61,443 nucleotides of DNA, from contig JAADVB010000097.1 in assembly GCA_023334545.1 (NCBI GenBank), forward strand, positions 1 through 61,443, written 5' to 3'. The DNA is from Salisapilia sapeloensis CBS 127946 (lineage: Eukaryota > Protista > Oomycota). The position numbers and the translations under genes were made by a program. A model generated the notes under the pieces. The model was not told the origin of the DNA. It did not search any database and saw only the letters and a program-made list of their open reading frames with translations. Below are positions 209-10,722 of the stretch, piece after piece. Numbering within the stretch: position 1 is the stretch's first letter; each line of letters starts with the position of its first letter.

Positions 209-1668
209 ATGTGACAAGAGATATCCATCTACTTTTGGGCCTTTCAAAACTTCTGGTAAAGATTTCTGCTCGTACATGTTACTTTGCCAACAATACTGTC
301 AGCGTCCGTATTGCTCATCTCGGTGAGACCATTTCCCGTGGCTCGAATATTTTTCGTTTCGGTTGTTCATCTACTGGTCGATTAGCTTGTATATCAAGCG
401 CACATTCGCATGCAACTACATTTCATGCGCTCCTGCAACCGATACTACAGCTCACACGTATTGCGTCCATCTATTTCATATCTTGCAGGCATATATGCTC
501 CAGGCGTACGTCAGTAAGAGAAATCATATTTGTTGGAACCCAGCTTCTAGCTTACCACTCAAAGAAATAGATTGGTTCGTCGAAAGTCAACTCGCAAGTG
601 ATGCTACTTTCTGTCTACTCTACGTTGTAATCGAATAAACTCACGAGCGGCTAACTTGACTTTCTTGCGCTGTCAGATCAGGCTCCAACTATCTACCTTG
701 ACAATAACACCATTATCGGATAGTATGGCCATGACATGTAACCAGCGATCTGAGTGGGATCCAAACACACGATTTGTTGCAACATCTGGCGATGAGTAAG
801 CCAAGCTGTGAGCTTCCGCTCCAAGTTTGTCTAGGGAGAAGCGTACCGCTACATATAAAGCTTCACTTGCCCATGTCCCTCCATCTAGTTCCAATATACG
901 TTCGAGTGATTTCGTATGACAGGATGGCGAGAATGAAAACAAATATATAGATTTTCAGTGTGAGCTGTACAAATGGGCACTTGGAGACGCTTTAGAGTCG
1001 TGCCGATCTGATTTGGACTGTACTTGAGCAGGCGCAATGTGAAGCACTGCATCTTCAGTACGGCTACGTTGATGCTTTTTGGCAAGTGTAGCTTCTTTTG
1101 ATTTCCACAAGGTACTGACTTGGGGTGCTTCTAAATGAAGCGATTTATGAAACCAAAGGATGATCGGCTGCATTAATATTCACCAGGTAACTTGTAGAAA
1201 CCCACACGAAGATCTACCGGCATAAAGAAAGTAGCTTGATTGAAACAAATAGTAAGCTTTCGTTCGTGTCTTGCGTTTCCATCTAGAGCGTACAACAAGG
1301 TCGACAAACCTATTTTGTCGGAACCCATCTTGAGCCGTGTGGGCGAGAGGTTCTATGCATGAAACGCCTCGTTTGTGCACCACGCTAGTCCCTCCAACTT
1401 TCGTCCCATTAAATAATCTCTTAGACCATACAAAAAATGTGATGAGCGCGCGTAATTATCCGATATTCACTTGAGGAAGTCGCCCTGCTCTGATCCGCAA
1501 CTGCGTACACCGACGCACTCGCTCGGCGCCTTCCATCTCGTGCTCTCGATCGCCTAGTCTTTATCTTTCCAAGGTCTACGCCGCTGATCTTTTTGGCGAA
1601 AATCAGTTTCACGAACGTAGCCGATTGGTGGCAAAAGTTTCACCACCCTACAATCCGTCAGCCAGTCC

Positions 1669-4600
1669 ATGGGCAATTTATCGAGTACCAATTCTTGGAA
1701 TCCGATCAATTGTCCCCCGTTTGCCCCTCGCCCGACTGACCGGATCGAAGAACAAAGTAGCATGGCAGAGGCCACGAATGGAAACGTGGAAAAAATGGAA
1801 GATCCCGATCCTTCCACCAATCGGTCAAGCATGGTCTCGGCCACGGAGGCGGCCAAGAACACGGCCTCGTCCCTCGTCTCGAGGCTCTTCTCCTCCACCC
1901 AACGACTCAGTCATAGCTTCAGCAGCATCAGCCTCGGCAACTCATCCCGGCCGAATGATGCCGAGTCGGACGATGGGAGCAGCTCCATGGCCACCAACGA
2001 GTATCCGACGCCCCCGACGCCCTTGTCGCCAAGCTCGCAGAACTATGAGCAAGAGACGTATAATCCGCAGACACAAGCAGAGCAAAAGAATGATGTGATG
2101 GCCGCTGAATTCGAGAATGAAAATGAAAATGACGATCCGTTTGCCGTGAATGTAGAGGAAGAAGACGACGACATCTCCACGACGTCGTCCCCCGTGTCGG
2201 AACGGGAGCAGATGGAGCGAGACGGACAAGACACCTTTGTTGCGCCTCTACTCTCTCGCTACCGATCTTCGTACAACAATCCGCTCGGTCGAACAGGATC
2301 TGGTGGCCGAGCCGTTCGGGGGAATGCCAACTCGGACTCTTCCTCTTCCGACGACGACTCGTCTTCGTCCTCCTACTCGGAGGAAGACCCCGACGATGAG
2401 TTCGGAGGTGTCAAAGTTAACGACTGGCTGGATGAAGAAGAAGTGCAGCCGATCGCAGAGGAGACGGCGAGCGAGTTGGGCAAGCACCGCTACGGCAGTG
2501 CGTCGTCGGCTTCTACCATGCACCAAGCGCTCTCGTCTCACTCACTCGTGTATGGAACTGGGCCGAACACTGGTCGAGTCAGCGGTGGCAGCAGCTCCAA
2601 CTCGTTGCGGACGGCCAACAGTTGGATGAACGCTTCGGACGATGCAGAGGACGACACGGAAGACGATGACGACATCGAGCTATCCGTCTTTCTCCAGGAG
2701 AACATGCCAGTGTATGAAGTCATGCGGCAGGTGCAGCTCTTCCGTAACTTGAGTCAGAACCAGCAGGAGGAAGTGGTCAAGGCACTCAAGCCAGCGTCTT
2801 TCCACGATGGACAGGTGATTGTGGAGCAAGGGACGAAAGGATCTCGGTTCTACATGATCGCATCGGGAGAAGCCGTGGTGACGAAGAAGAATGAGGAAGG
2901 ACAGGAGCGTATGGTCACGCGTCTGCAGTCTGGCAACTACTTTGGAGAGCTAGCACTCATCTATGACGACCCTCGATCCGCCACCGTCCGTGCTGCGGGA
3001 GACGTAGAGCTCTTGTACCTAACGCAAAAGGATTTCCAGCACATTAACCAAGTGCACTTAAGTCTCATGCTGCAGCAAGTGCCTATCCTCGCGAGGCTGA
3101 GTGGACAGGACCAAGACAGCGTTCTCAGTCGACTCCAGCCGGCCAACTTTAGCGACGGAGAGTACATTGTCAAGCAGGGAGAGCAAGGATCTCGGTTCTA
3201 CATGATCACAAAGGGAGAGGCAGTCGTCATGGAGTTTAACAGTGAAGTGCATCCGGAAGATGGCGAGCGGGAGCTCACGAGGCTGTACGAAGGCCACGTG
3301 TTTGGCGAGATGTCGCTCATCTACAGCGAACCTCGGACGGCGAGTGTCCGTGCCATCGGGCCTGTCAAGTGTCTTTATCTGAGCAAAGAAGACTTTGACG
3401 AGTGCCTCCTATCTGACCACTTCCATCGATTCATTCAAGAGTCGTACATTGAGAAAGCCACGCGCCGGGCCATGCGTCTACGTATGCAGCAGCGCGCCAT
3501 GAGCAACAGTCGAGATAGCGGCACGTCGTCTAGCATGGCAGAGGACGCGAATAGTGCTTTGAATATGAGCGCCAGCACGAACAGCGGCCAAGGAGAGCAC
3601 ATCAAGGCGACGGAGACGAAGAAGCTTGTCAAACAGCGTCTGAAGAACGGCCAGAAGGTCGTGAACAAGTACATTATTCAACGCGACTTAGGCAAAGGAA
3701 CGTTTGGACGCGTCAAACTGTGTCAAAGCGAAGAGGACGGACACTTGTACGCCGTCAAGATCATGCACAAGAGCTTCATGCAGCGGATGGCAGGCAAGGA
3801 AGATCAGCTGCACGACGCGATGCGACGAGAAGTGGCGATTATGAAGAAACTCAACCATCGCAACGTGGTCAAGCTCGTGGAAGTGATTGACGATCCGTCC
3901 AGTCAAAAGGTGTACCTGGTGCAAGAGTACGTCCAGCACAACTTGATGACGGAGATCAACAAGAGCGCTGGGTTAGAGGATGAGACGGCGCGCAAATATC
4001 TTCGCGACCTGCTTTGTGGCATCCACTACCTGCACTTTAACAAGGTCATCCATCGAGACATCAAGCCAGAGAACATTCTCGTGAGTGACGAAGGCGTTGC
4101 TAAGATTGCCGACTTTGGTACGGCTCGGATGATCATGAACGAGAGCGAGACGCTGCAAGGAGCCAAGGGAACACCGGCGTTTATGGCGCCGGAGATGTTT
4201 AACATCGACGCCACGTACATGGGTTCGGCTGTTGACGTCTGGTCTCTCGGTGCTACGTTGTTCATGATGATCTGCGGTCGACCGCCGTGGCTGGCGGAGA
4301 ACGAAATCGTGCTGGCGGAAAAGGTGCAGAACGATGAGCTGAAGTTCCCTTCGGACATTGAGTACGCTCTTGACCCGCATCTGAAGAACTTGATCCAGCG
4401 CATGCTCACCAAGGACGCCGACGTGCGCATTTCTTTAAATGACTGCATCTACCACGACTGGGTGACCAAGGAAGGTAGTGAGCCACTTGGACTGCAAGGA
4501 GAAGAGAACATTCTGACGGTGAGTGTGGACGACACGGACCAGGCGATTGAGAACATCCCGGAGCAGATCGACCAGAGTCTCACGGAGCGTCTGAAGCAGG

Positions 4601-7161
4601 CGAATCTGCTCGTCAAGACACGACAGCAAGGTCGGAACTCGACAGTCCTCCGATCAGGAAGCGGACAGACGGCGTGGGATGCCAACCGACAGGCCCACGG
4701 CACGTCGACGTCCAACCTCCATACGCACCACAGCAACTCGCAGTACTCTACCACCGGATCGAATGGAAGTGGTACGAGTCAACCAAGTCGCGGATCGTCC
4801 AATGGAGAAGTGTCTCGTGTCATCCACAACTGGCGTCGGAATAAGCGTCTGCAGGCCATGTACGGACAGAAGGACCTGTCGGAACGCAGTCGTGAGCTGC
4901 TGATGGAGCAACGGCATCCTGGGTTCACGGCTGATCGTGCCAACGTGACGGAGATCATCCTCCCTGCGGCCAACCCGACGTCTAGGTCGAGATACCCGAG
5001 CACTTCGAGCATTAACACGAATCAGCCACGAGCCACCTCCGACTCTAGCTCGCCCACGTCTGCTCCAGGTTCTCCCGCGCGAGTCTCGAACTCCCGCAGC
5101 TCCTCCATTGAGAGCAACCCGCTGCCTGTCCAGCGCCATAACAGCGGCAGGTTCGAGTACCGTGACTCTGGTAATCTGGAAGGTTTCGGACGCACGAGCT
5201 TCACGTCCGTGTCTCGCATGTCGGATGGCGGCGTGTCGAACTCAACGATGGACGAGATCCAGGCGGCGCGTGAAAGTCTGGCGAGTGACGACCAGAACGA
5301 CATGAGTCACAACAGCTACAGCAGCTTCCACACGAACTTGTCTCGCGAGAGTGGATCGGACGCCGCTCTGCTGAAACGGTCGCTGTCTCGGAAGAAGGAT
5401 TTCCTCATGGTCACGTCGGAAGTCTTCCGAGGAGAGGAAGGCGACTATCAGTCGAGAAAGGTCTTGTTCCAGGCCAAGGACGACGACTTTTCAGTCGCTT
5501 CGAGGATCCCGAGTAAGAGCATGTCGGGCAGGGACTCTGTGACGAGCACTAGTCGACGCCACTCGTCCCACGCGACGACGAAAGCCAGTGGATCTCGCAA
5601 GAGCTCTTCATTTAATAATAGCATGGGTAGCATGGGCAGTTCATGCTCGGACAAGTCCGGTCCGTCGTACAAAAAGCCGAAGAAGTCCATGTCCAAGGAC
5701 GAAGTGGACTTGGGTGACATTGAGTTTGAGCAAGTGTCGGATGATGAGGATGAAGATGATGATGAGGAAGAAGAAGTGGAAGGGTCCATTGAGCTTTATG
5801 ACTCGAGTAGTGATGAAGGAAGCGAGTACAGTGACGTTGAATGTGACGTGGATGTCGAAGCCACGTTCGATGAGCTCATTGGATCGCCCAACCTGACGGA
5901 GTACGCCAACGAAGACGAAGAGCTGATGCCGGTTGACGCGAGCACGAATGCGACAACGAGAGGCTCTGCTTCCTCGTCTAGCATGCGGTCGCTGCTGCAC
6001 ATGCCGTCGTACCGATCCATCGTGCAAGTGTACGTGAGCAGTAAGATTCGAGAGAACTTGAATCTGCGCATCCGTGCCGGGTATGCCGAAGCCAAGGGTC
6101 AGCGGCAGTACATGGAAGACCGCAGTCTGTCCATTGCAGACGTTGACTTTAACTCGTGTCCTCCAGCCTTGACGGATGCGTTTGAGAATCTCGGCTACTT
6201 TGCAGTCTACGACGGGCATAACGGAACGGAAACGGTGGAGAAGCTGCAGGAAGAGCTGCACGAGCGATTCTTTGAGCACCTCCACTTTGCCTCGAATCCG
6301 ATGGCAGCCATGGCACAAGCATGCGAAGACTTAGACCACGACATGCTGCAGATGCAGAACAGCAGCATGACGCCTGATCGTCGATGCAGCTTTGTGTACG
6401 GCGACGGGTTCATCGGACCAAGCGGTGGAGATGTGGCGTCGGACGACGAGGAGCAGGAGGAGGTGACCGAAGCGACGGATGATCTCATGTTGTTTGATGA
6501 CGATGACCAACAAGCGGCAAATGAGCTGGAGGCTTCCAAGCCGCACATTCAGCCCATCTCCTTCTCTGGTGCCGTCGCAGTCTTCGTCGTTGTGGCGAAG
6601 AAGAAGATCGAAGGTGGCTTTATTGAAGAAGATGAGAACGAAGAGGAGGAGGAGACCAAGAGCAGTGCGAGCAACAAGGACAGTCCGACGGTGCTGTACA
6701 TTGGCAACACGGGTGACTGCCGCGCGGTCTTGAGCACGGCTGAGGGTGTCGCGGTGGACATTACCAAGGACCACAAGGCAAGTGACGCGGAGGAGAAGAA
6801 GCGGATTGAAGAGTCCGGTGGGTTCGTCCACAATGGTCGTCTCGATGGCATCCTGGCCATTTCTCGCGGCTTTGGTGATCTCGCGCACAAGCAAGAGGGG
6901 CACCTGATCGTTACGCCTGACCTGTACGAACATGCCGTGACGGACGAGGACGAGTTCATGCTGCTCGCCAGTGACGGCATTTTTGACGTCATCACGTCGC
7001 AGCAGGCTGTGAACTTTGTCCGGCGCAAGCTTCGGATGCACGGAGACGTTCAGTTGGCGGCTCAGGAGCTGTTGCAAAAGGCGCAGGCGTACTACGCGCA
7101 TGATAACCTGAGCGTCGTCCTCATTGCGCTCAACCAAAACGAGAAAGAGCCGTCCGTATAA
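1669..7161 (+). CDS. Tandem cNMP-binding domains + CAMKK-like Ser/Thr kinase + PP2C (PPM) phosphatase fusion protein, 1830 aa
   Basis: Two phosphate-binding cassettes (FGELALIYDDPRSATV, FGEMSLIYSEPRTASV). Kinase motifs GKGTFG, VAVK, HRDIKPEN, DFG, GTPAFMAPE. PP2C motifs QRQYMEDR, VYDGHNG, NTGDCRAVL, DHK, AISRGFGD, LLASDGIFD, DNLSVV. One uninterrupted ORF. The start could alternatively be the ATG at 1762. Confidence 0.93.
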   Translation: MGNLSSTNSWNPINCPPFAPRPTDRIEEQSSMAEATNGNVEKMEDPDPSTNRSSMVSATEAAKNTASSLVSRLFSSTQRLSHSFSSISLGNSSRPNDAESDDGSSSMATNEYPTPPTPLSPSSQNYEQETYNPQTQAEQKNDVMAAEFENENENDDPFAVNVEEEDDDISTTSSPVSEREQMERDGQDTFVAPLLSRYRSSYNNPLGRTGSGGRAVRGNANSDSSSSDDDSSSSSYSEEDPDDEFGGVKVNDWLDEEEVQPIAEETASELGKHRYGSASSASTMHQALSSHSLVYGTGPNTGRVSGGSSSNSLRTANSWMNASDDAEDDTEDDDDIELSVFLQENMPVYEVMRQVQLFRNLSQNQQEEVVKALKPASFHDGQVIVEQGTKGSRFYMIASGEAVVTKKNEEGQERMVTRLQSGNYFGELALIYDDPRSATVRAAGDVELLYLTQKDFQHINQVHLSLMLQQVPILARLSGQDQDSVLSRLQPANFSDGEYIVKQGEQGSRFYMITKGEAVVMEFNSEVHPEDGERELTRLYEGHVFGEMSLIYSEPRTASVRAIGPVKCLYLSKEDFDECLLSDHFHRFIQESYIEKATRRAMRLRMQQRAMSNSRDSGTSSSMAEDANSALNMSASTNSGQGEHIKATETKKLVKQRLKNGQKVVNKYIIQRDLGKGTFGRVKLCQSEEDGHLYAVKIMHKSFMQRMAGKEDQLHDAMRREVAIMKKLNHRNVVKLVEVIDDPSSQKVYLVQEYVQHNLMTEINKSAGLEDETARKYLRDLLCGIHYLHFNKVIHRDIKPENILVSDEGVAKIADFGTARMIMNESETLQGAKGTPAFMAPEMFNIDATYMGSAVDVWSLGATLFMMICGRPPWLAENEIVLAEKVQNDELKFPSDIEYALDPHLKNLIQRMLTKDADVRISLNDCIYHDWVTKEGSEPLGLQGEENILTVSVDDTDQAIENIPEQIDQSLTERLKQANLLVKTRQQGRNSTVLRSGSGQTAWDANRQAHGTSTSNLHTHHSNSQYSTTGSNGSGTSQPSRGSSNGEVSRVIHNWRRNKRLQAMYGQKDLSERSRELLMEQRHPGFTADRANVTEIILPAANPTSRSRYPSTSSINTNQPRATSDSSSPTSAPGSPARVSNSRSSSIESNPLPVQRHNSGRFEYRDSGNLEGFGRTSFTSVSRMSDGGVSNSTMDEIQAARESLASDDQNDMSHNSYSSFHTNLSRESGSDAALLKRSLSRKKDFLMVTSEVFRGEEGDYQSRKVLFQAKDDDFSVASRIPSKSMSGRDSVTSTSRRHSSHATTKASGSRKSSSFNNSMGSMGSSCSDKSGPSYKKPKKSMSKDEVDLGDIEFEQVSDDEDEDDDEEEEVEGSIELYDSSSDEGSEYSDVECDVDVEATFDELIGSPNLTEYANEDEELMPVDASTNATTRGSASSSSMRSLLHMPSYRSIVQVYVSSKIRENLNLRIRAGYAEAKGQRQYMEDRSLSIADVDFNSCPPALTDAFENLGYFAVYDGHNGTETVEKLQEELHERFFEHLHFASNPMAAMAQACEDLDHDMLQMQNSSMTPDRRCSFVYGDGFIGPSGGDVASDDEEQEEVTEATDDLMLFDDDDQQAANELEASKPHIQPISFSGAVAVFVVVAKKKIEGGFIEEDENEEEEETKSSASNKDSPTVLYIGNTGDCRAVLSTAEGVAVDITKDHKASDAEEKKRIEESGGFVHNGRLDGILAISRGFGDLAHKQEGHLIVTPDLYEHAVTDEDEFMLLASDGIFDVITSQQAVNFVRRKLRMHGDVQLAAQELLQKAQAYYAHDNLSVVLIALNQNEKEPSV

Positions 7162-7350
7162 GACAAGGTAGCAAGTGAGAGAGAGACAATATGAATTGTG
7201 CGTATAACTTTTTGTTGATTTGATATTCCTGAACCTTTCCACATATGACTACCTACATTTGACGACTCAACTGCGTGAAGCAGCTCCCCATCGCGTCTTT
7301 TGTACGCACGCTACGAGACTTCGGAACATGCCTTCCAGTCGGCCTCCGAC

Positions 7351-10300
7351 CTAGTATGCACAGTACACGATAAGCTTATGACATAAAGAAGGAACGGATA
7401 GATCGATACAAACCTCGGAAATGTCGTGGTCACTCAGAGCTGGGAGCAGCGTCTGGTACCAAAAGTGAAGACGCAACTCGTCGCCTCCAGTCTCCAGGAC
7501 GAAGCAGACGCTCGCGACTGGATCCTGTATCTGACTGGGCGAAGATGTCTGAGCAAGCAGGCGAGACAATGTCTTCGTCTTCCACAGCACCATTAGGTCG
7601 TCGCTGTCCGGTACATTACCCCACGTCCGACGAACGACCGAGTCATAGACTCTTTGCTTGCGAGTGTCATTGGACGGCAAGAAGGCCAGCTTTTGGGTCC
7701 AAAAGCACACGTCCTCGATATCGCTGACGCTGTCCAGCACCACGATCTCGTCGTCTGCATTAACCCAGCGCATTAAACGCACTGGGTCTTTCAAGTAACC
7801 CAACGCTCGCTCTTCGTCTGGCGTGTGGAGGTCGACGATGCCTCTCCACTGCACCAGTCCATCATCTTGCGTCCACTCTTCCGGAGTGGATATGTAGAGC
7901 GAAAATCCATCGCCGCTGGTCACGTTTTCCCAATTGACAATGGCCGAACTCGATAGACTTTCACCAGCACTACTACTGCGCCGACCCTTCAAACCGTCTG
8001 TGGAGCCGTACTGGGTATACGCTGCAGCTATAGCCAATTCCTCGGAGGTGAAGGGAGGGATGGACTTGCTGGCGTGCTTTGCAAGCACGCTATCCACGAA
8101 GTGAGCCAAGTCTTGGTCGTCATGAGTCTTAGGTTTCTTCAGCTTGTTGACCGCATCGAGATTGTCGAGGAGAGGCTGGTACGTCTTTGGATCCGACTCT
8201 GGGTCCATCGTCAGTACCTCGCAGACTGTACGCAAAGCAGGCGGAAGCAGAACGTGTATGAACGCTTGGGCAAACAGGTTGGAGCTAGCTCCTTGACACA
8301 CGAGCGTTACGTTGGAGATCCTGTTGGGGTAGTGCTGCGTCGATATGGTCAGTATTTCCAACATGATGCGCACGTGGCTTTCGGCAAACGAAGACAAGGT
8401 GCAGTTACGACAGTCAAGAATCAGACTTAGGCGATGCATATTGTCCCTTCTTTTCACCTGGTAGGTCCACATGTACTCCCACAAGTATAGCCAGTATCGT
8501 CCGACTTGCTCTTTGCTCACTCCATGTACTTTGAGCAGCTGCCAGTTAACTGACCCAAGAGACACGACCAACGTCTTCTCCTTTTGCTTGTTATCGTCAC
8601 TAGTCAAGAACTCATGTGGAAAGCCTCGTTTGATGGCGCGGAAGTTTGTCCGAGGCACGGTCAAGATCGAGTCGAGAGCAGTCTCGATCCGGAATACACG
8701 CGTGTGCGTAGGCAGCGACCGACTGGACGTCCACTGCTTCTCTTCCATCTCACGAGCATTCTTCGCAGTCGCTCCTTTACTGTCCGGATGCACTTCAAGC
8801 GCAGCTAGAGTGAGGTACCAGTCAAGACGCTTTGGTCCTAGCAACGGCTTAAATCCAATCTCTAGCTTCCACAGGACAACAACAAAAGCTGCGAGGAACC
8901 CAGCCAGCAGGACGACTGCCAGGACCATGTGACAGTGCTGACTTAAAGCGGCTAATGCAACGCCACAGACAGCGACGATGCCACCGATGGCAGGCTTCAT
9001 CAGTGTCTTGGACATAAGCGTAAAGGATGAGTTCGTTTGTAGCTGCGCTTGGAACTTTAGTCGAACGAGGAATTGAGACTTGGATGATCCAGCACGACTT
9101 CTAGGTACGTGAGTCTCTGGTCCGAACTGCTCTTCGATCTCCGTCCGGCGGTGGGAAGCAGGGACTTCGGTTGCGCCTCGAATGTCCATCATGGTTGTCT
9201 GGGAAGTCCAACGAGGACTGACGACAGCACTCGCAAGCTCTTCCAGACTCAGCGTGAACTTATTACCATCACTTAGTACGATCTCGACGGACGAATTGAT
9301 GTTCATGTTGCCCAAGTATATCTGCTGTCCCCATCCGATTGTATCGTCGAGACTCTGCTGCATCGTCAAGTGAGTGATGAGGACGTCGCGGATGGAAGGA
9401 CAGTAACATGACGTATAGTGCTCGTCTGAACGCCAGACGGTCACGTACGAGTCGTCTGCATGGACCCATTCTGGACTTTCTATCGCATGCGACAGCACAG
9501 ATGCCCACTTGGCGCATGCGACCGCCTCATTACAACGCAGAGACAGCTTCGGTCCGTTCTTCATCTCGACGTCAAAGTTGTGAGGCTTGGAGAACTTTTC
9601 GTACAATACTTTGCGACAGTCATGCAACATGATACTAGCCTTAGGCTTGGCAGACGACACGTTAGTCGCGTTCGTGCCTTCGCCAAACCGGTGCAGCGCT
9701 ACTTGAGTCAGGACGAAATACCCCTTCTTCCAGATCTTGACAAAGTTCCGGCTGCGGAGCATGAGCTCTCCTTGGTGCAGCACGCCGACAAAGTCTCCTG
9801 TGGCTGTCCGATCGGCTGCCGTCTGCGATTGGGATCGACTGTTGCGTCTTGATGCTTCGACAGACCCACGACCAGAGCTACTTGAGTCAGACAAGACCGC
9901 ACTGTCGTTTAAACTGCTGTCCAGACTAGTCGTCTGCAGACTGATTTCGCAGCAAATACTCGACGATGCTGTCTCCTGCTTTCGCTGGACAATGTACGAC
10001 GTTTTGGTGGACGCCTTCCGAGCGACTGTACCAAGACCTCGAATCCAGACGTGGTCTCCGCCTTTGATGCTTACGACTGTGGACATAGTGTTCTGTCGAT
10101 CCATCATGGTCAGCTTCCTTCTCTTCTCCAGGCCATTGGATGCGACTTTGAACGGCAGTAGTTTCGGCAGCTTATCGAATGTAGAGTCAGCGTCATCCAC
10201 TTCTTCGTCATCAAAGATAGGAGATGGCTCGCGGTCCGGCTGCGATTGTTGTGGGTCGTCCTGTTCGAACACAAAGACCATGGCACCAGAGTCTCCTCCA

Positions 10301-10722
10301 GCAGCAACATAGCCGACGTACGGACTCTTTTGTATAATGCCAAGCGTCCGTCCGTCCGACGTCTGCAGCTGGACAGGGTCCTGATAACACACTGGCTGGT
10401 CCTTTCGCTTTTCAAACCCAGGAGCAGGCGTGATCGTCCACTCTGTTGGCTCCACAGGCTCATGTTCGTTGGTATAGGAACCACGCAAGTCGTCACTGAC
10501 GGACGACGGGGACGAGATCAAGAGAGACGTCGAACTTTGCGCGAAGGAAGAGCTACTGGATGACATGAAGGACTTGGAGTGAGGCACGGCGTCCTCGAGC
10601 GCGAGGTAGGCATCAGGTCGCGTCGGACTCTTGGCTGAGTGTACGAGTTTCAGGTGCACGACGGACGTGTAGTATCGCAGGATGCTACCAGAGCTCGACG
10701 CTAGCGGGACGGTCCTGCTCAT
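7351..10722 (-). CDS. Multidomain lipid-binding/transfer protein: PH domain, two hydrophobic segments, CRAL-TRIO (Sec14-like) and START-like domains
   Basis: PH-like LHQGELMLRSRNFVKIWKKGYFVL...WASVLSHAI. TM pair IGGIVAVCGVALAAL / MVLAVVLLAGFLAAFVVVLW. CRAL-TRIO-like LSLILDCRNCTL...STQHYPNRISNVTLV. START-like NWENVTSGDGFSLY...WRGIVDL...YLKDPVRLMRW. Confidence 0.75.
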   Translation of the reverse strand: MSRTVPLASSSGSILRYYTSVVHLKLVHSAKSPTRPDAYLALEDAVPHSKSFMSSSSSSFAQSSTSLLISSPSSVSDDLRGSYTNEHEPVEPTEWTITPAPGFEKRKDQPVCYQDPVQLQTSDGRTLGIIQKSPYVGYVAAGGDSGAMVFVFEQDDPQQSQPDREPSPIFDDEEVDDADSTFDKLPKLLPFKVASNGLEKRRKLTMMDRQNTMSTVVSIKGGDHVWIRGLGTVARKASTKTSYIVQRKQETASSSICCEISLQTTSLDSSLNDSAVLSDSSSSGRGSVEASRRNSRSQSQTAADRTATGDFVGVLHQGELMLRSRNFVKIWKKGYFVLTQVALHRFGEGTNATNVSSAKPKASIMLHDCRKVLYEKFSKPHNFDVEMKNGPKLSLRCNEAVACAKWASVLSHAIESPEWVHADDSYVTVWRSDEHYTSCYCPSIRDVLITHLTMQQSLDDTIGWGQQIYLGNMNINSSVEIVLSDGNKFTLSLEELASAVVSPRWTSQTTMMDIRGATEVPASHRRTEIEEQFGPETHVPRSRAGSSKSQFLVRLKFQAQLQTNSSFTLMSKTLMKPAIGGIVAVCGVALAALSQHCHMVLAVVLLAGFLAAFVVVLWKLEIGFKPLLGPKRLDWYLTLAALEVHPDSKGATAKNAREMEEKQWTSSRSLPTHTRVFRIETALDSILTVPRTNFRAIKRGFPHEFLTSDDNKQKEKTLVVSLGSVNWQLLKVHGVSKEQVGRYWLYLWEYMWTYQVKRRDNMHRLSLILDCRNCTLSSFAESHVRIMLEILTISTQHYPNRISNVTLVCQGASSNLFAQAFIHVLLPPALRTVCEVLTMDPESDPKTYQPLLDNLDAVNKLKKPKTHDDQDLAHFVDSVLAKHASKSIPPFTSEELAIAAAYTQYGSTDGLKGRRSSSAGESLSSSAIVNWENVTSGDGFSLYISTPEEWTQDDGLVQWRGIVDLHTPDEERALGYLKDPVRLMRWVNADDEIVVLDSVSDIEDVCFWTQKLAFLPSNDTRKQRVYDSVVRRTWGNVPDSDDLMVLWKTKTLSRLLAQTSSPSQIQDPVASVCFVLETGGDELRLHFWYQTLLPALSDHDISEVCIDLSVPSLCHKLIVYCAY

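What the first reader, a model, noticed from the sequence alone, without database searches (positions are those of the whole stretch)
1669..7161. One polypeptide carrying a cyclic-nucleotide sensor, a kinase and a phosphatase (cNMP x2 - CAMKK-like kinase - PP2C)
Seen: two cNMP domains (~2713-3450), an intact kinase (~3661-4470) and an intact PP2C (~6070-7135) lie in a single stop-free, intron-free ORF, separated by long Ser/acidic linkers. Established: canonical PKA and PKG couple cNMP domains to AGC kinases, and the plant fusion has the order PP2C-cNMP-kinase. This protein differs in order and its kinase looks CAMKK-like (KVYLVQEY, QGAKGTPAFMAPE, LKFP). Inference: a self-contained cyclic-nucleotide-gated write/erase switch. 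Oomycetes are known for novel domain fusions, so orthologs may already be annotated, but the mechanism is probably uncharacterised.
Basis: partly seen in the sequence, partly recalled or inferred. Interest (0 to 1): 0.72.

Follow-up and report, generated by a model that had tools for sequence, protein, structure and literature searches.

The report
cNMP-sensing CaMKK-type kinase–PP2C fusion
One expressed, intron-free oomycete gene encodes a probably membrane-anchored protein joining two cyclic-nucleotide sensors, a CaMKK-type kinase and a PP2C phosphatase. The architecture is real and conserved across stramenopiles, but it is already catalogued in Phytophthora and its biochemistry is untested.

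Summary
Window 1669-7161 (+) is a single 1830-codon ORF. It carries a conserved N-myristoylation signal, two intact cNMP-binding domains, a catalytically intact kinase and a catalytically intact PP2C. The kinase scores far better against CaMKK2 (226 bits) than against AMPK (150) or PKA (133).

Spliced RNA assemblies cover the whole ORF as one unspliced 5.8-6.0 kb contig that stops at the gene borders. The order cNMP-cNMP-kinase-PP2C recurs in about 80 homologues. These come from all oomycete orders and from other stramenopiles (Cafeteria, brown, golden and yellow-green algae), and their kinases form one clade far from true PKGs.

It is not new as an architecture. The Phytophthora sojae phosphatome paper lists the orthologue Ps568223 with the same domain order, one transcript, and zoospore/cyst expression. 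Database records call orthologues 'CAMKK/CAMKK-META' or 'cGMP-dependent protein kinase'. No biochemical study was found.

The 'cNMP-gated write/erase switch' remains an inference. It is made plausible by plant PKG/PP2C19, a differently ordered fusion in which cGMP raises kinase and lowers phosphatase activity.

Elsewhere in this genome the scan noted a CNB-less kinase-PP2C paralogue, which I confirmed, and a PP2C-cNMP-pseudokinase.

Verdict: a well-supported member of a catalogued but uncharacterised family, of moderate interest.

The parts
1669..7161 (+). Complete intron-free coding sequence, 1830 aa plus stop
   Evidence: ORF list and translation. RNA contigs of three runs cover it end to end without joints or differences.
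1669..1689 (+). N-terminal MGNLSST: candidate N-myristoylation signal (Gly2, Ser6)
   Evidence: 24 of 37 oomycete orthologue models start MGxxx[S/T]. This also supports ATG 1669 as the true start.
1690..2673 (+). Poorly conserved Ser/Thr- and acid-rich N-terminal region (res 8-335)
   Evidence: 6-31% column identity to orthologues. 25% S+T and 19% D+E. No Pfam match.
2686..3042 (+). cNMP-binding domain A (res 340-458). The phosphate-binding cassette is at nt 2941-2994 and ends R-S-A.
   Evidence: Pfam. PBC position. F/G/E/R/A of the cassette are invariant or at least 90% conserved in 66 homologues, and the family consensus is R-T-A. AF2 pLDDT is mostly 77-95.
3043..3414 (+). cNMP-binding domain B (res 459-582). 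The phosphate-binding cassette is at nt 3301-3354 and ends R-T-A.
   Evidence: The cassette block is 95% identical among oomycetes. The Arg is invariant in 66 homologues.
3415..3516 (+). Long basic helix after CNB-B (res 583-616). It holds an invariant Arg (R600) and a near-invariant Arg (R603). A disordered 30-residue Ser-rich tether follows.
   Evidence: AF2 helix at model residues 248-281, then pLDDT below 50 at model 281-309. Invariant columns R265 and R268 of alignment A1.
3610..4488 (+). CaMKK-class protein kinase domain with a short N-terminal beta extension (res 648-940), catalytically intact
   Evidence: Pfam 6.1e-64. CaMKK2 226-228 bits against AMPK 150. Foldseek target-normalised TM 0.92-0.95 to CaMKK1/2. 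The tree puts it in a 97% SH-aLRT clade with other CaMKK-like kinases, away from PKGs.
4447..4581 (+). Conserved post-kinase extension (res 927-971). Its first part aligns with the CaMKK2 C-terminal extension. No calmodulin-binding segment is detectable after it.
   Evidence: The alignment to 6cmj runs to query residue 289. 72-80% identity among oomycetes. A search with res 940-1000 found no CaMKK peptide chain. AF2 pLDDT is below 50 for res 943-972.
4819..4980 (+). Conserved linker island 1 (res 1051-1104)
   Evidence: About 59% identity among oomycetes against 20-30% in the flanks. Found in 42 homologues, including Cafeteria.
5359..5514 (+). Conserved linker island 2 (res 1231-1282). The motif is L-x-R-basic-x-D-F-[LV]-M-V-T ... 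G ... basic-K-[VI]-[IV]-F-x-A, predicted as a three-stranded beta meander.
   Evidence: 83% identity among oomycetes. Found in 51 homologues out to Cafeteria and Chrysoparadoxa, but not in the CNB-less paralogue family. R17, D20 and F21 are invariant in A2. AF2 strands at model 20-54 with pLDDT about 70.
5827..5943 (+). Conserved acidic island before the PP2C (res 1387-1425). The segment around the invariant D1416 and P1421 is predicted with high confidence.
   Evidence: 74% identity for 1387-1402. Invariant D192 and near-invariant P197 of A2. The pLDDT block for model 191-200 is 89.
6052..7134 (+). PP2C (PPM) phosphatase domain (res 1462-1822), catalytically intact. It has two disordered acidic inserts, at res 1568-1633 and 1646-1673.
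   Evidence: Pfam 2.2e-45. PDB best hits are Arabidopsis PP2C57/PPH1 and PPM1B/PPM1A. Foldseek target-normalised TM about 0.8 to PPH1, PPM1B and PPM1A. Metal-site residues are invariant. The inserts have low pLDDT and are 27-39% D+E.

Best explanation
SHOWN. This is the orthologue, in an unnamed oomycete, of a pan-stramenopile signalling enzyme. The enzyme has an N-terminal myristoylation signal, a disordered Ser/acid-rich region and a tandem cNMP-binding module. These are followed by a CaMKK-class kinase that has lost the detectable calmodulin-binding tail, then a roughly 520-residue phosphorylatable linker with conserved islands, and a PPM1A/B-like PP2C. It is made from one unspliced mRNA. 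Both cNMP pockets and both active sites are conserved.

INFERRED. Cyclic nucleotide (cGMP or cAMP; the R-[ST]-A cassettes do not decide which) takes the place of Ca2+/calmodulin as the input of a CaMKK-type kinase. Binding to the CNB tandem moves the conserved basic helix that follows CNB-B and changes kinase output, as CNB domains do in PKG and PKA. The tethered PP2C supplies the opposing reaction, so the phosphorylation state of the targets follows the cNMP level rather than enzyme abundance. Regulation may be reciprocal, as reported for plant PKG.

The most likely targets, by analogy with CaMKK and PPM1A/B, are activation-loop threonines of SNF1/AMPK- and CAMK-group kinases, at a membrane. 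The P. sojae orthologue's expression suggests this happens mainly in zoospores and cysts.
For: - Gene, transcript and domains.
- CaMKK class.
- No calmodulin-binding segment detected, and no Pro in the K697-E721 stretch where CaMKKs carry their Arg/Pro-rich insert.
- Both cNMP cassettes and all catalytic residues of kinase and PP2C are invariant or near-invariant from oomycetes to Cafeteria and ochrophyte algae.
- Domain order is identical in about 80 homologues.
- The CNB-bearing kinases form one clade, 98% SH-aLRT.
- AF2 of res 336-990 with a 66-sequence alignment gives pLDDT 81 and pTM 0.80. That is hard to reach unless the two CNBs and the kinase pack as one unit.
- The closest in-genome relatives of both the kinase (213 bits) and the PP2C (107 bits) lie in one other protein, the C712 kinase-PP2C paralogue. 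The kinase-PP2C pair is therefore an old functional unit to which sensors were added.
- The genome encodes class III cyclases and many other cNMP-binding proteins.
- Purifying selection: 36 of 40 listed differences to a 95-99% identical relative fall on third codon positions.
- Precedent: cGMP raises kinase and lowers PP2C activity in rice PKG (PMC11638329, PMC11775391).
- CaMKK as AMPK kinase, and PP2C used as the T172 phosphatase: papers listed.
- P. sojae orthologue Ps568223: one transcript, high mRNA in zoospores and cysts.
Against: - No binding or activity data exist for any family member.
- The ligand (cAMP or cGMP) is undetermined.
- No pseudosubstrate was identified.
- The AF2 arrangement does not superpose on solved PKG chains (query-normalised TM at most 0.41, rmsd 19-31 A). 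I could not inspect its contacts, so 'PKG-like release' is analogy only.
- Complex prediction did not run.
- The kinase and PP2C are separated by about 520 mostly disordered residues, so acting on a common substrate is not structurally enforced.
- For the plant analogue PP2C19, the PP2C domain alone was necessary and sufficient for the phototropism function. Such fusions therefore need not work as switches in vivo.
- The PP2C is not specifically CaMK-phosphatase-like (4jnd only 36 bits).
- Substrate identity is pure analogy.
Confidence: 0.5

Rival explanations
1. Self-resetting enzyme. The PP2C acts mainly in cis, on the fused kinase's own activation loop or on autophosphorylated Ser/Thr sites in the long linkers. 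cNMP would then trigger a pulse of kinase activity that the tethered phosphatase ends, so the enzyme works as a timer rather than as a two-way switch on external substrates.
For: - The linkers are 25-27% Ser/Thr.
- The activation loop contains Ser/Thr (ESET, res 825-828).
- Conserved linker islands, including one modelled confidently next to the PP2C, suggest intramolecular docking.
- PP2Cs are known to dock on and dephosphorylate a CAMK-group kinase's activation loop (HAB1-SnRK2.6, entry 3ujg, listed).
Against: - Linker Ser/Thr positions are poorly conserved (20-30% identity).
- The one Ser inside conserved island 2 is not conserved in distant homologues.
- There are no data on autophosphorylation.
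Confidence: 0.2
2. Co-localised but independent activities. The kinase and the phosphatase have different substrates. The fusion only delivers both to the same membrane site or complex, and cNMP controls at most the adjacent kinase.
For: - The tether is about 520 residues and disordered.
- The myristoylation signal is conserved.
- In Arabidopsis PP2C19 the PP2C works without its cNMP and kinase domains.
- Some homologues appear to lack the PP2C (the CNB-K rows), although these may be truncated gene models.
Against: - The kinase-PP2C pairing is kept in two separate old paralogue families and across stramenopiles. This argues for a functional coupling stronger than co-delivery.
Confidence: 0.2
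3. The cNMP domains are not ligand sensors here. They would be structural or dimerisation modules, or bind another small molecule, and the enzyme would be controlled by phosphorylation or by expression stage.
For: - Trypanosomatid PKA regulatory subunits appear among the CNB matches (6ftf, 6flo, 6h4g). From my own knowledge, not tested here, these do not respond to cAMP.
- A prior study cited in PMC5322657 found no change in cAMP or cGMP during zoosporogenesis.
Against: - Both cassettes keep the canonical F-G-E ... R-[ST]-A residues, with the Arg invariant or at least 90% conserved in 66 homologues.
- CNB-A is the best-scoring cNMP domain in the whole genome.
- The genome has cyclases.
Confidence: 0.07
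4. Annotation artefact: two or three adjacent genes read as one ORF.
For: Long low-complexity linkers could in principle hide gene borders.
Against: - There is no stop in 5.5 kb.
- Single RNA contigs in three runs end at the gene borders, while the neighbouring gene sits on its own spliced contig.
- The same order occurs in about 80 homologues, including transcriptome-derived ones.
- Read mapping supports one mRNA for the P. sojae orthologue.
Confidence: 0.02

Closest known systems
Phytophthora sojae Ps568223 and the other 'STKc-containing PPMs' of the oomycete phosphatome survey (PMC10925823)
   Same: Identical architecture and spacing (CAP 161-288, CAP 292-399, STKc 493-751, PPM 1389-1744). 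Phytophthora orthologues are 70-72% identical over the cNMP-kinase core. One transcript.
   Different: The only difference is the species. The paper treats all five P. sojae kinase-PPM proteins together and calls the kinases possibly cAMP/cGMP-dependent. It does not separate the three architectures or note the CaMKK class, and it gives no biochemistry.
Plant dual-activity PKG: rice PKG and Arabidopsis PP2C19 (Shen et al. 2019; PMC11775391)
   Same: One chain with a PP2C, two cNMP domains and a kinase, located at a membrane. It is the only characterised case where a cyclic nucleotide raises kinase activity and lowers phosphatase activity.
   Different: The order is PP2C, cNMP, cNMP, kinase, against cNMP, cNMP, kinase, PP2C here. 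The kinase here is CaMKK-class. Oomycete copies of the plant-type fusion carry an inactive kinase (PMC3019232) and coexist with this family, so the two are separate families.
CaMKK1/CaMKK2 (and fission-yeast Ssp1)
   Same: The kinase domain matches CaMKK2 at 226-228 bits. The Foldseek alignment is 40% identical with target-normalised TM above 0.9, and the match includes the post-kinase extension.
   Different: There is no detectable calmodulin-binding/autoinhibitory segment and no Arg/Pro-rich insert. It has an N-terminal cNMP tandem and a C-terminal PP2C instead.
cGMP-dependent protein kinase (PKG), especially Plasmodium PKG
   Same: cNMP domains lie N-terminal to the kinase in one chain. Among solved kinases, the CNB tandem is most similar to Plasmodium PKG (143-147 bits). 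UniRef names the orthologues 'cGMP-dependent protein kinase'.
   Different: The kinase is not AGC: PKA scores 133 bits, no PKG is among the 60 best chains, and PKG-like proteins form the outgroup in the tree. The predicted domain arrangement does not superpose on PKG structures.
CNB-less CaMKK-like kinase-PP2C paralogue family (own genome C712; Ps480075/Ps313333 type; Paraphysomonas, Aphanomyces)
   Same: The same kinase class fused to a C-terminal PP2C. It is the closest in-genome relative of both domains.
   Different: It has no cNMP domains; the N-terminal 450 aa have no Pfam match. It lacks linker island 2 and forms a separate clade with 100% SH-aLRT.

Membership tests
CaMKK (CAMKK/CAMKK-META) kinase family | The kinase domain is closer to CaMKK1/2 than to any other kinase class. 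| tested here: met
   CaMKK2 226-228 bits and CaMKK1 205, against AMPK 150, LKB1 135, CaMKI 134 and PKA 133. Foldseek target-normalised TM 0.90-0.95. Clade with 97% SH-aLRT that includes an Ssp1-named protein. NCBI records (locus tags of Broad Institute origin, from my own knowledge) name the Saprolegnia and Aphanomyces orthologues CAMKK/CAMKK-META.
CaMKK (CAMKK/CAMKK-META) kinase family | Catalytic residues are intact, and the GTPAFMAPE-type P+1 loop and the post-kinase WVT..G.EPL extension are present. | tested here: met
   Positions. The alignment with 6cmj runs through the extension. The residues are invariant in 66 homologues.
CaMKK (CAMKK/CAMKK-META) kinase family | A Ca2+/calmodulin-binding autoinhibitory segment follows the kinase domain. 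| tested here: not met
   Res 940-1000 matched no CaMKK or calmodulin-complex peptide chain at E up to 10. The region has low AF2 confidence. A short diverged motif cannot be excluded.
CaMKK (CAMKK/CAMKK-META) kinase family | An Arg/Pro-rich insert lies between the beta3 Lys and the alphaC Glu. That this is a family feature comes from established knowledge, not from a test here. | tested here: not met
   The 23 residues between K697 and E721 contain no Pro. PDB constructs that keep the insert align only from query residue 60-61 onward.
CaMKK (CAMKK/CAMKK-META) kinase family | Phosphorylates activation-loop Thr of AMPK/SNF1 and CaMKI/IV. | not testable with these tools
   Needs enzyme assays.
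cGMP-dependent protein kinase (PKG) | Tandem cNMP-binding domains lie N-terminal to the kinase in the same chain. | tested here: met
cGMP-dependent protein kinase (PKG) | The catalytic domain is AGC-class. | tested here: not met
   No PKG among the best 60 PDB chains, and PKA scores only 133 bits. cNMP-AGC proteins are the outgroup, separated by starred branches.
cGMP-dependent protein kinase (PKG) | Activated by cGMP. | not testable with these tools
   R-S-A and R-T-A cassettes (family consensus R-T-A) are compatible with cGMP. The same triplet also occurs in cAMP-preferring proteins (my own knowledge), so it does not decide.
PPM/PP2C phosphatases | PP2C fold with the metal-binding Asp residues and the MED, DGH, GDxR, DGxxD and DN motifs. 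| tested here: met
   Pfam 2.2e-45. Motifs. Invariant in 45 homologues. Target-normalised TM about 0.8 to PPH1, PPM1B and PPM1A.
Plant dual-activity PKG (OsPKG / AtPP2C19) | PP2C, two cNMP domains and a kinase in one chain. | tested here: met
Plant dual-activity PKG (OsPKG / AtPP2C19) | Domain order is PP2C, cNMP, cNMP, kinase. | tested here: not met
   The order here is cNMP, cNMP, kinase, PP2C. The plant order is given in PMC11775391. P. sojae has both types as separate genes.
Plant dual-activity PKG (OsPKG / AtPP2C19) | cGMP stimulates the kinase and inhibits the phosphatase. | not testable with these tools
   Needs enzyme assays.
Oomycete cNMP-cNMP-kinase-PPM proteins (Ps568223 type) | Same domain order and spacing, sequence orthology and a single transcript. 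| tested here: met
   Table S3 coordinates compared. 63-74% identity over res 340-1000 to proteins of all oomycete orders. Oomycete clade with 99% SH-aLRT. RNA contigs.

The most novel reading that the evidence does not exclude
In stramenopiles the CaMKK step of the CaMKK-to-AMPK/CAMK cascade has been rewired. Cyclic nucleotide replaces Ca2+/calmodulin as the input. The upstream kinase is covalently tied to the PP2C that reverses it. Together they form a membrane-anchored 'paradoxical' bifunctional enzyme that sets activation-loop phosphorylation of SNF1/CAMK kinases in proportion to cNMP and independently of its own abundance. Conserved linker island 2 (res 1231-1282) would act as the intramolecular coupling or docking element.
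Probability: 0.22. Interest if true: 0.7.

Novelty: new member of a known kind. Interest (0 to 1): 0.42.

Why it matters
Cyclic-nucleotide genes in Phytophthora are switched on almost only in sporangia and zoospores, yet what cAMP or cGMP do there is unknown (PMC5322657). This conserved enzyme is a concrete candidate effector.

It could link cNMP to the SNF1/CAMK kinase network through a built-in forward and reverse reaction. It is absent from named animals, plants and fungi in the searches run here. That makes it a useful model for how bifunctional kinase/phosphatase enzymes are controlled.

It also corrects a database label. The orthologues called 'cGMP-dependent protein kinase' are not PKGs by their catalytic domain.

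Tried and rejected
- **Complex prediction** (CNB tandem 336-612 against kinase 648-985) was returned NOT FOLDED by a tool rule, so there is no verdict either way.
- **Calmodulin-binding tail.** I searched res 940-1000 against PDB peptide chains and found only chance-level hits.
- **Global fold comparison** of the CNB-CNB-kinase model with PKG/PKA structures superposes single domains only: query-normalised TM at most 0.41, rmsd 19-31 A. A PKG-like inhibited geometry is therefore not supported, and not excluded either.
- **Suspected plant-type fusion at G000:C689.** I thought this was a PP2C-cNMP fusion. It is a separate PP2C gene next to a cNMP x3-mitochondrial-carrier ORF.
- **Literature.** The Saprolegnia genome paper and the Morris 2009 domain-fusion paper do not mention this architecture. 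Searches for a CaMKK/PP2C/cNMP fusion found only AMPK literature. Searches for the three Pfam names together found only unrelated PP2C family surveys.
- **Not used.** The large representative-protein search and the metagenome and genome collection scans were not run, because the word search already gave about 86 family members.
Full report
**1. The observation**

Window 1669..7161 (+) is one ATG-initiated ORF of 1830 codons. Pfam finds two cNMP_binding domains, a Pkinase domain (res 669-932, E 6.1e-64) and a PP2C (E 2.2e-45) in that order, and nothing else.

The catalytic machinery is complete:
- Kinase: G-loop 675-680, K697, E721, HRD 795-797, DFG 815-817, GTPAFMAPE 834-842.
- PP2C: MED 1482-1484, DGH 1515-1517, GD 1682-1683, DG 1769-1770, D1773, DN 1812-1813.
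- cNMP cassettes: 425-442 ends R-S-A and 545-562 ends R-T-A.

The regions between the domains are Ser/Thr- and acid-rich.

**2. Is it one gene and is it expressed?**

Four public runs hold the stretch almost completely. I laid three of them. In each, one contig of 5761-6027 nt covers the ORF with no difference and no joint. These contigs run from about 1156, 1351 or 1376 to 7136-7202; the stop codon is at 7159-7161.

A second contig, with a different depth, starts at 7206-7208 and carries the convergent neighbour gene. That contig leaves the genome at 7352 and rejoins at 7416. Allowing for the three ambiguous bases, this is a 63-nt intron at 7351-7413 with GT-AG on the minus strand. The runs are therefore spliced RNA, although their records do not say so. 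The ORF is transcribed as one unspliced message. Short-read contigs cannot prove that single molecules span it, so long-read cDNA would close this.

A fourth run, from a 95-99% identical relative, differs mostly at third codon positions: 36 of the 40 listed sites.

**3. What kind of kinase?**

The best solved relatives are CaMKK2 (226-228 bits) and CaMKK1 (205). AMPK scores 150, LKB1 135, CaMKI 134 and PKA 133, and no PKG appears in the best 60. The CaMKK2 alignment continues past the canonical domain into the WVT..G.EPL extension. The AF2 model of the kinase superposes on CaMKK1/2 with target-normalised TM 0.90-0.95.

In a maximum-likelihood tree of 91 kinase domains, the query lies in an oomycete clade (99% SH-aLRT). 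That clade sits inside a single clade of all cNMP-bearing relatives (98). This in turn sits inside a CaMKK-like clade (97) that also holds the CNB-less kinase-PP2C family, a stand-alone kinase of this genome and an Ssp1-named protein. cNMP-AGC (PKG-like) proteins form the outgroup. The UniRef name 'cGMP-dependent protein kinase' is misleading.

Two CaMKK hallmarks are missing:
- No Pro-rich insert between K697 and E721.
- No detectable calmodulin-binding segment after the kinase.

**4. The other modules**

Among solved kinases, the CNB tandem resembles Plasmodium PKG most (143-147 bits). PKA RI-alpha scores 124 and human PKG I 85-88. The best PDB match overall is a large Toxoplasma protein, PCR12, at 192 bits.

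Cassette residues F-G-E and R-x-A are invariant or at least 90% conserved in 66 homologues, and the family consensus is R-T-A in both domains. This is compatible with cGMP but does not decide the ligand.

The PP2C is a standard PPM fold, with target-normalised TM about 0.8 to PPH1/TAP38, PPM1B and PPM1A. It has two disordered acidic inserts.

**5. Conservation and distribution**

A word search with the cNMP-kinase core found proteins with all four Pfam domains in every oomycete order, at 63-74% identity: Globisporangium, Pythium, Phytophthora, Nothophytophthora, Peronospora, Albugo, Saprolegnia and Aphanomyces. It also found them at 30-43% identity in Cafeteria, Chrysoparadoxa, Tribonema, Ectocarpus, Nemacystus, Mallomonas and Chromulina, and in many unnamed marine sequences. 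All named hosts are stramenopiles, apart from one record labelled Batrachochytrium salamandrivorans, which I did not verify.

The order cNMP-cNMP-kinase-PP2C is the same in about 80 of them.

In oomycetes the N-terminus MGxxx[S/T] is kept in 24 of 37 gene models. This supports both the start codon and N-myristoylation.

Conservation profiling shows islands inside the 'linker':
- Res 927-971, the CaMKK-like extension.
- Res 1051-1104.
- Res 1231-1282, which is 83% identical among oomycetes.
- Res 1387-1402.

Island 1231-1282 carries a motif (L-x-R-basic-x-D-F-[LV]-M-V-T, a Gly-containing turn, then basic-K-[VI]-[IV]-F) that is recognisable out to Cafeteria and Chrysoparadoxa. It is absent from the CNB-less paralogues. 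AF2 models it as a three-stranded meander with pLDDT about 70. AF2 also models a short segment around the invariant D1416 with pLDDT 89.

**6. The genome context**

The assembly is 22.4 Mb. It has three CaMKK-class kinases:
- This one.
- A 1233-aa paralogue on contig C712, with an unannotated N-terminus, a kinase and a PP2C.
- A stand-alone 518-aa kinase on C592.

The C712 protein is the nearest in-genome relative of both the kinase (213 bits) and the PP2C (107 bits, against 85 for the next). The kinase-PP2C pair therefore predates the split, and the cNMP tandem is a sensor added to, or lost from, an older kinase-phosphatase core.

The genome also encodes class III cyclases, including two ORFs of about 2500-2600 aa with twin cyclase domains. 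cNMP-binding domains match at 69 places on more than 30 contigs.

Neighbouring genes in the window are unrelated. A convergent lipid-transfer-type gene starts about 45 nt after the stop codon.

**7. Structure prediction**

AF2 on res 336-990 with the 66-sequence alignment gave mean pLDDT 81 and pTM 0.80. For a 655-residue three-domain chain, this pTM suggests that the two CNBs and the kinase are predicted as one packed unit.

They are joined by a long basic helix (res 583-616, with the invariant R600) and a disordered 30-residue tether. I could not read contacts, and the arrangement does not match solved PKG chains. Complex prediction was not run by the tool.

**8. What is known**

- The P. 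infestans kinome paper lists cNMP and PP2C accessory domains on CAMK-group kinases. It discusses only the plant-like fusion with an inactive kinase (PMC3019232).
- The 2024 oomycete phosphatome paper describes five P. sojae kinase-PPM proteins as bifunctional. Its Table S3 gives Ps568223 as CAP-CAP-STKc-PPM, which is the orthologue. It lists Ps544740 and Ps354449 as PPM-CAP-CAP-STKc, and Ps480075 and Ps313333 as STKc-PPM. Figure S2 supports single transcripts. Ps568223 mRNA is high in zoospores and cysts (PMC10925823).
- No functional or biochemical study of this family was found.
- The nearest characterised system is plant PKG/PP2C19 (PP2C, cNMP, cNMP, kinase). In rice PKG, cGMP promotes kinase and inhibits phosphatase activity. 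In Arabidopsis, the PP2C domain alone sufficed for the phototropism role.

**9. Interpretation**

The descriptive claim is secure. The mechanistic claim is inference:
- cNMP replaces Ca2+/calmodulin as the input to a CaMKK-type kinase.
- A tethered PP2C provides the reverse reaction.
- The likely targets are SNF1/AMPK- and CAMK-type activation loops.

This inference rests on domain conservation, the old kinase-PP2C pairing, the compact AF2 unit, the known CaMKK/PP2C antagonism on AMPK (papers listed) and the plant precedent.

The rivals cannot be separated in silico. They are a cis-acting reset of the enzyme itself, independent activities that are merely co-localised, and non-sensing CNB domains.

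**10. Verdict**

This is a real, expressed, conserved gene and a member of a family already catalogued in Phytophthora but never characterised.

New here:
- Firm CaMKK placement and the loss of calmodulin-type features.
- The pan-stramenopile spread and single origin of the CNB-bearing clade.
- The shared ancestry with a CNB-less kinase-PP2C family.
- The conserved myristoylation signal.
- The conserved linker motif.

Interest is moderate.

Noticed in passing
window 7206-7445 (minus strand): The convergent neighbour gene (ORF 7351..10722, minus strand) has a 63-nt GT-AG intron at 7351-7413. RNA contigs continue into a last exon down to about 7206. The mechanical ORF therefore does not give its true C-terminus. 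The two genes' transcripts end within about 5-70 nt of each other.
   Followed up: partly
window 1156-1668: RNA contigs extend 290-510 nt upstream of the ATG. The region has lower GC (about 45%) and several upstream ATGs. This is either an unusually long 5' leader for an oomycete gene or an overlapping upstream transcript.
   Followed up: no
L015:2627-6502 (minus strand; G000:C689): A 1292-aa ORF combines three cNMP-binding domains with three mitochondrial-carrier repeats, which suggests a cyclic-nucleotide-sensing carrier. A separate PP2C gene fragment lies about 1 kb upstream on the same strand.
   Followed up: partly
L013:3190-6888 (minus strand; G000:C712) and L014:132-1685 (minus strand; G000:C592): There are two further CaMKK-class kinases in this genome. 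One is a 1233-aa kinase-PP2C fusion whose N-terminal 450 aa have no Pfam match. The other is a stand-alone 518-aa kinase.
   Followed up: partly
G000:C507:6428-8977 (+) and G000:C423:128348-130939 (-): Two open frames of 2536 and 2628 aa each hold two class III nucleotide-cyclase domains. They are likely sources of the cNMP signal.
   Followed up: no
protein P0041: A family member is labelled Batrachochytrium salamandrivorans (BASA81), a fungus. In the tree it sits among unnamed environmental sequences inside the otherwise stramenopile family. The label may reflect contamination or mislabelling.
   Followed up: no
window 2680-3520: The best solved match of the CNB tandem is not a kinase. It is a 2736-aa Toxoplasma protein, PCR12 (TGME49_219070, entry 9ya0), with four matching stretches at 192 bits.
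   Followed up: no
window 1588-7180, run X5: A 2025 run of a different 'organism B' holds fragments that are 95-99% identical. 36 of the 40 listed differences are at third codon positions. This points to a closely related species or strain in which the gene is under purifying selection.
   Followed up: partly
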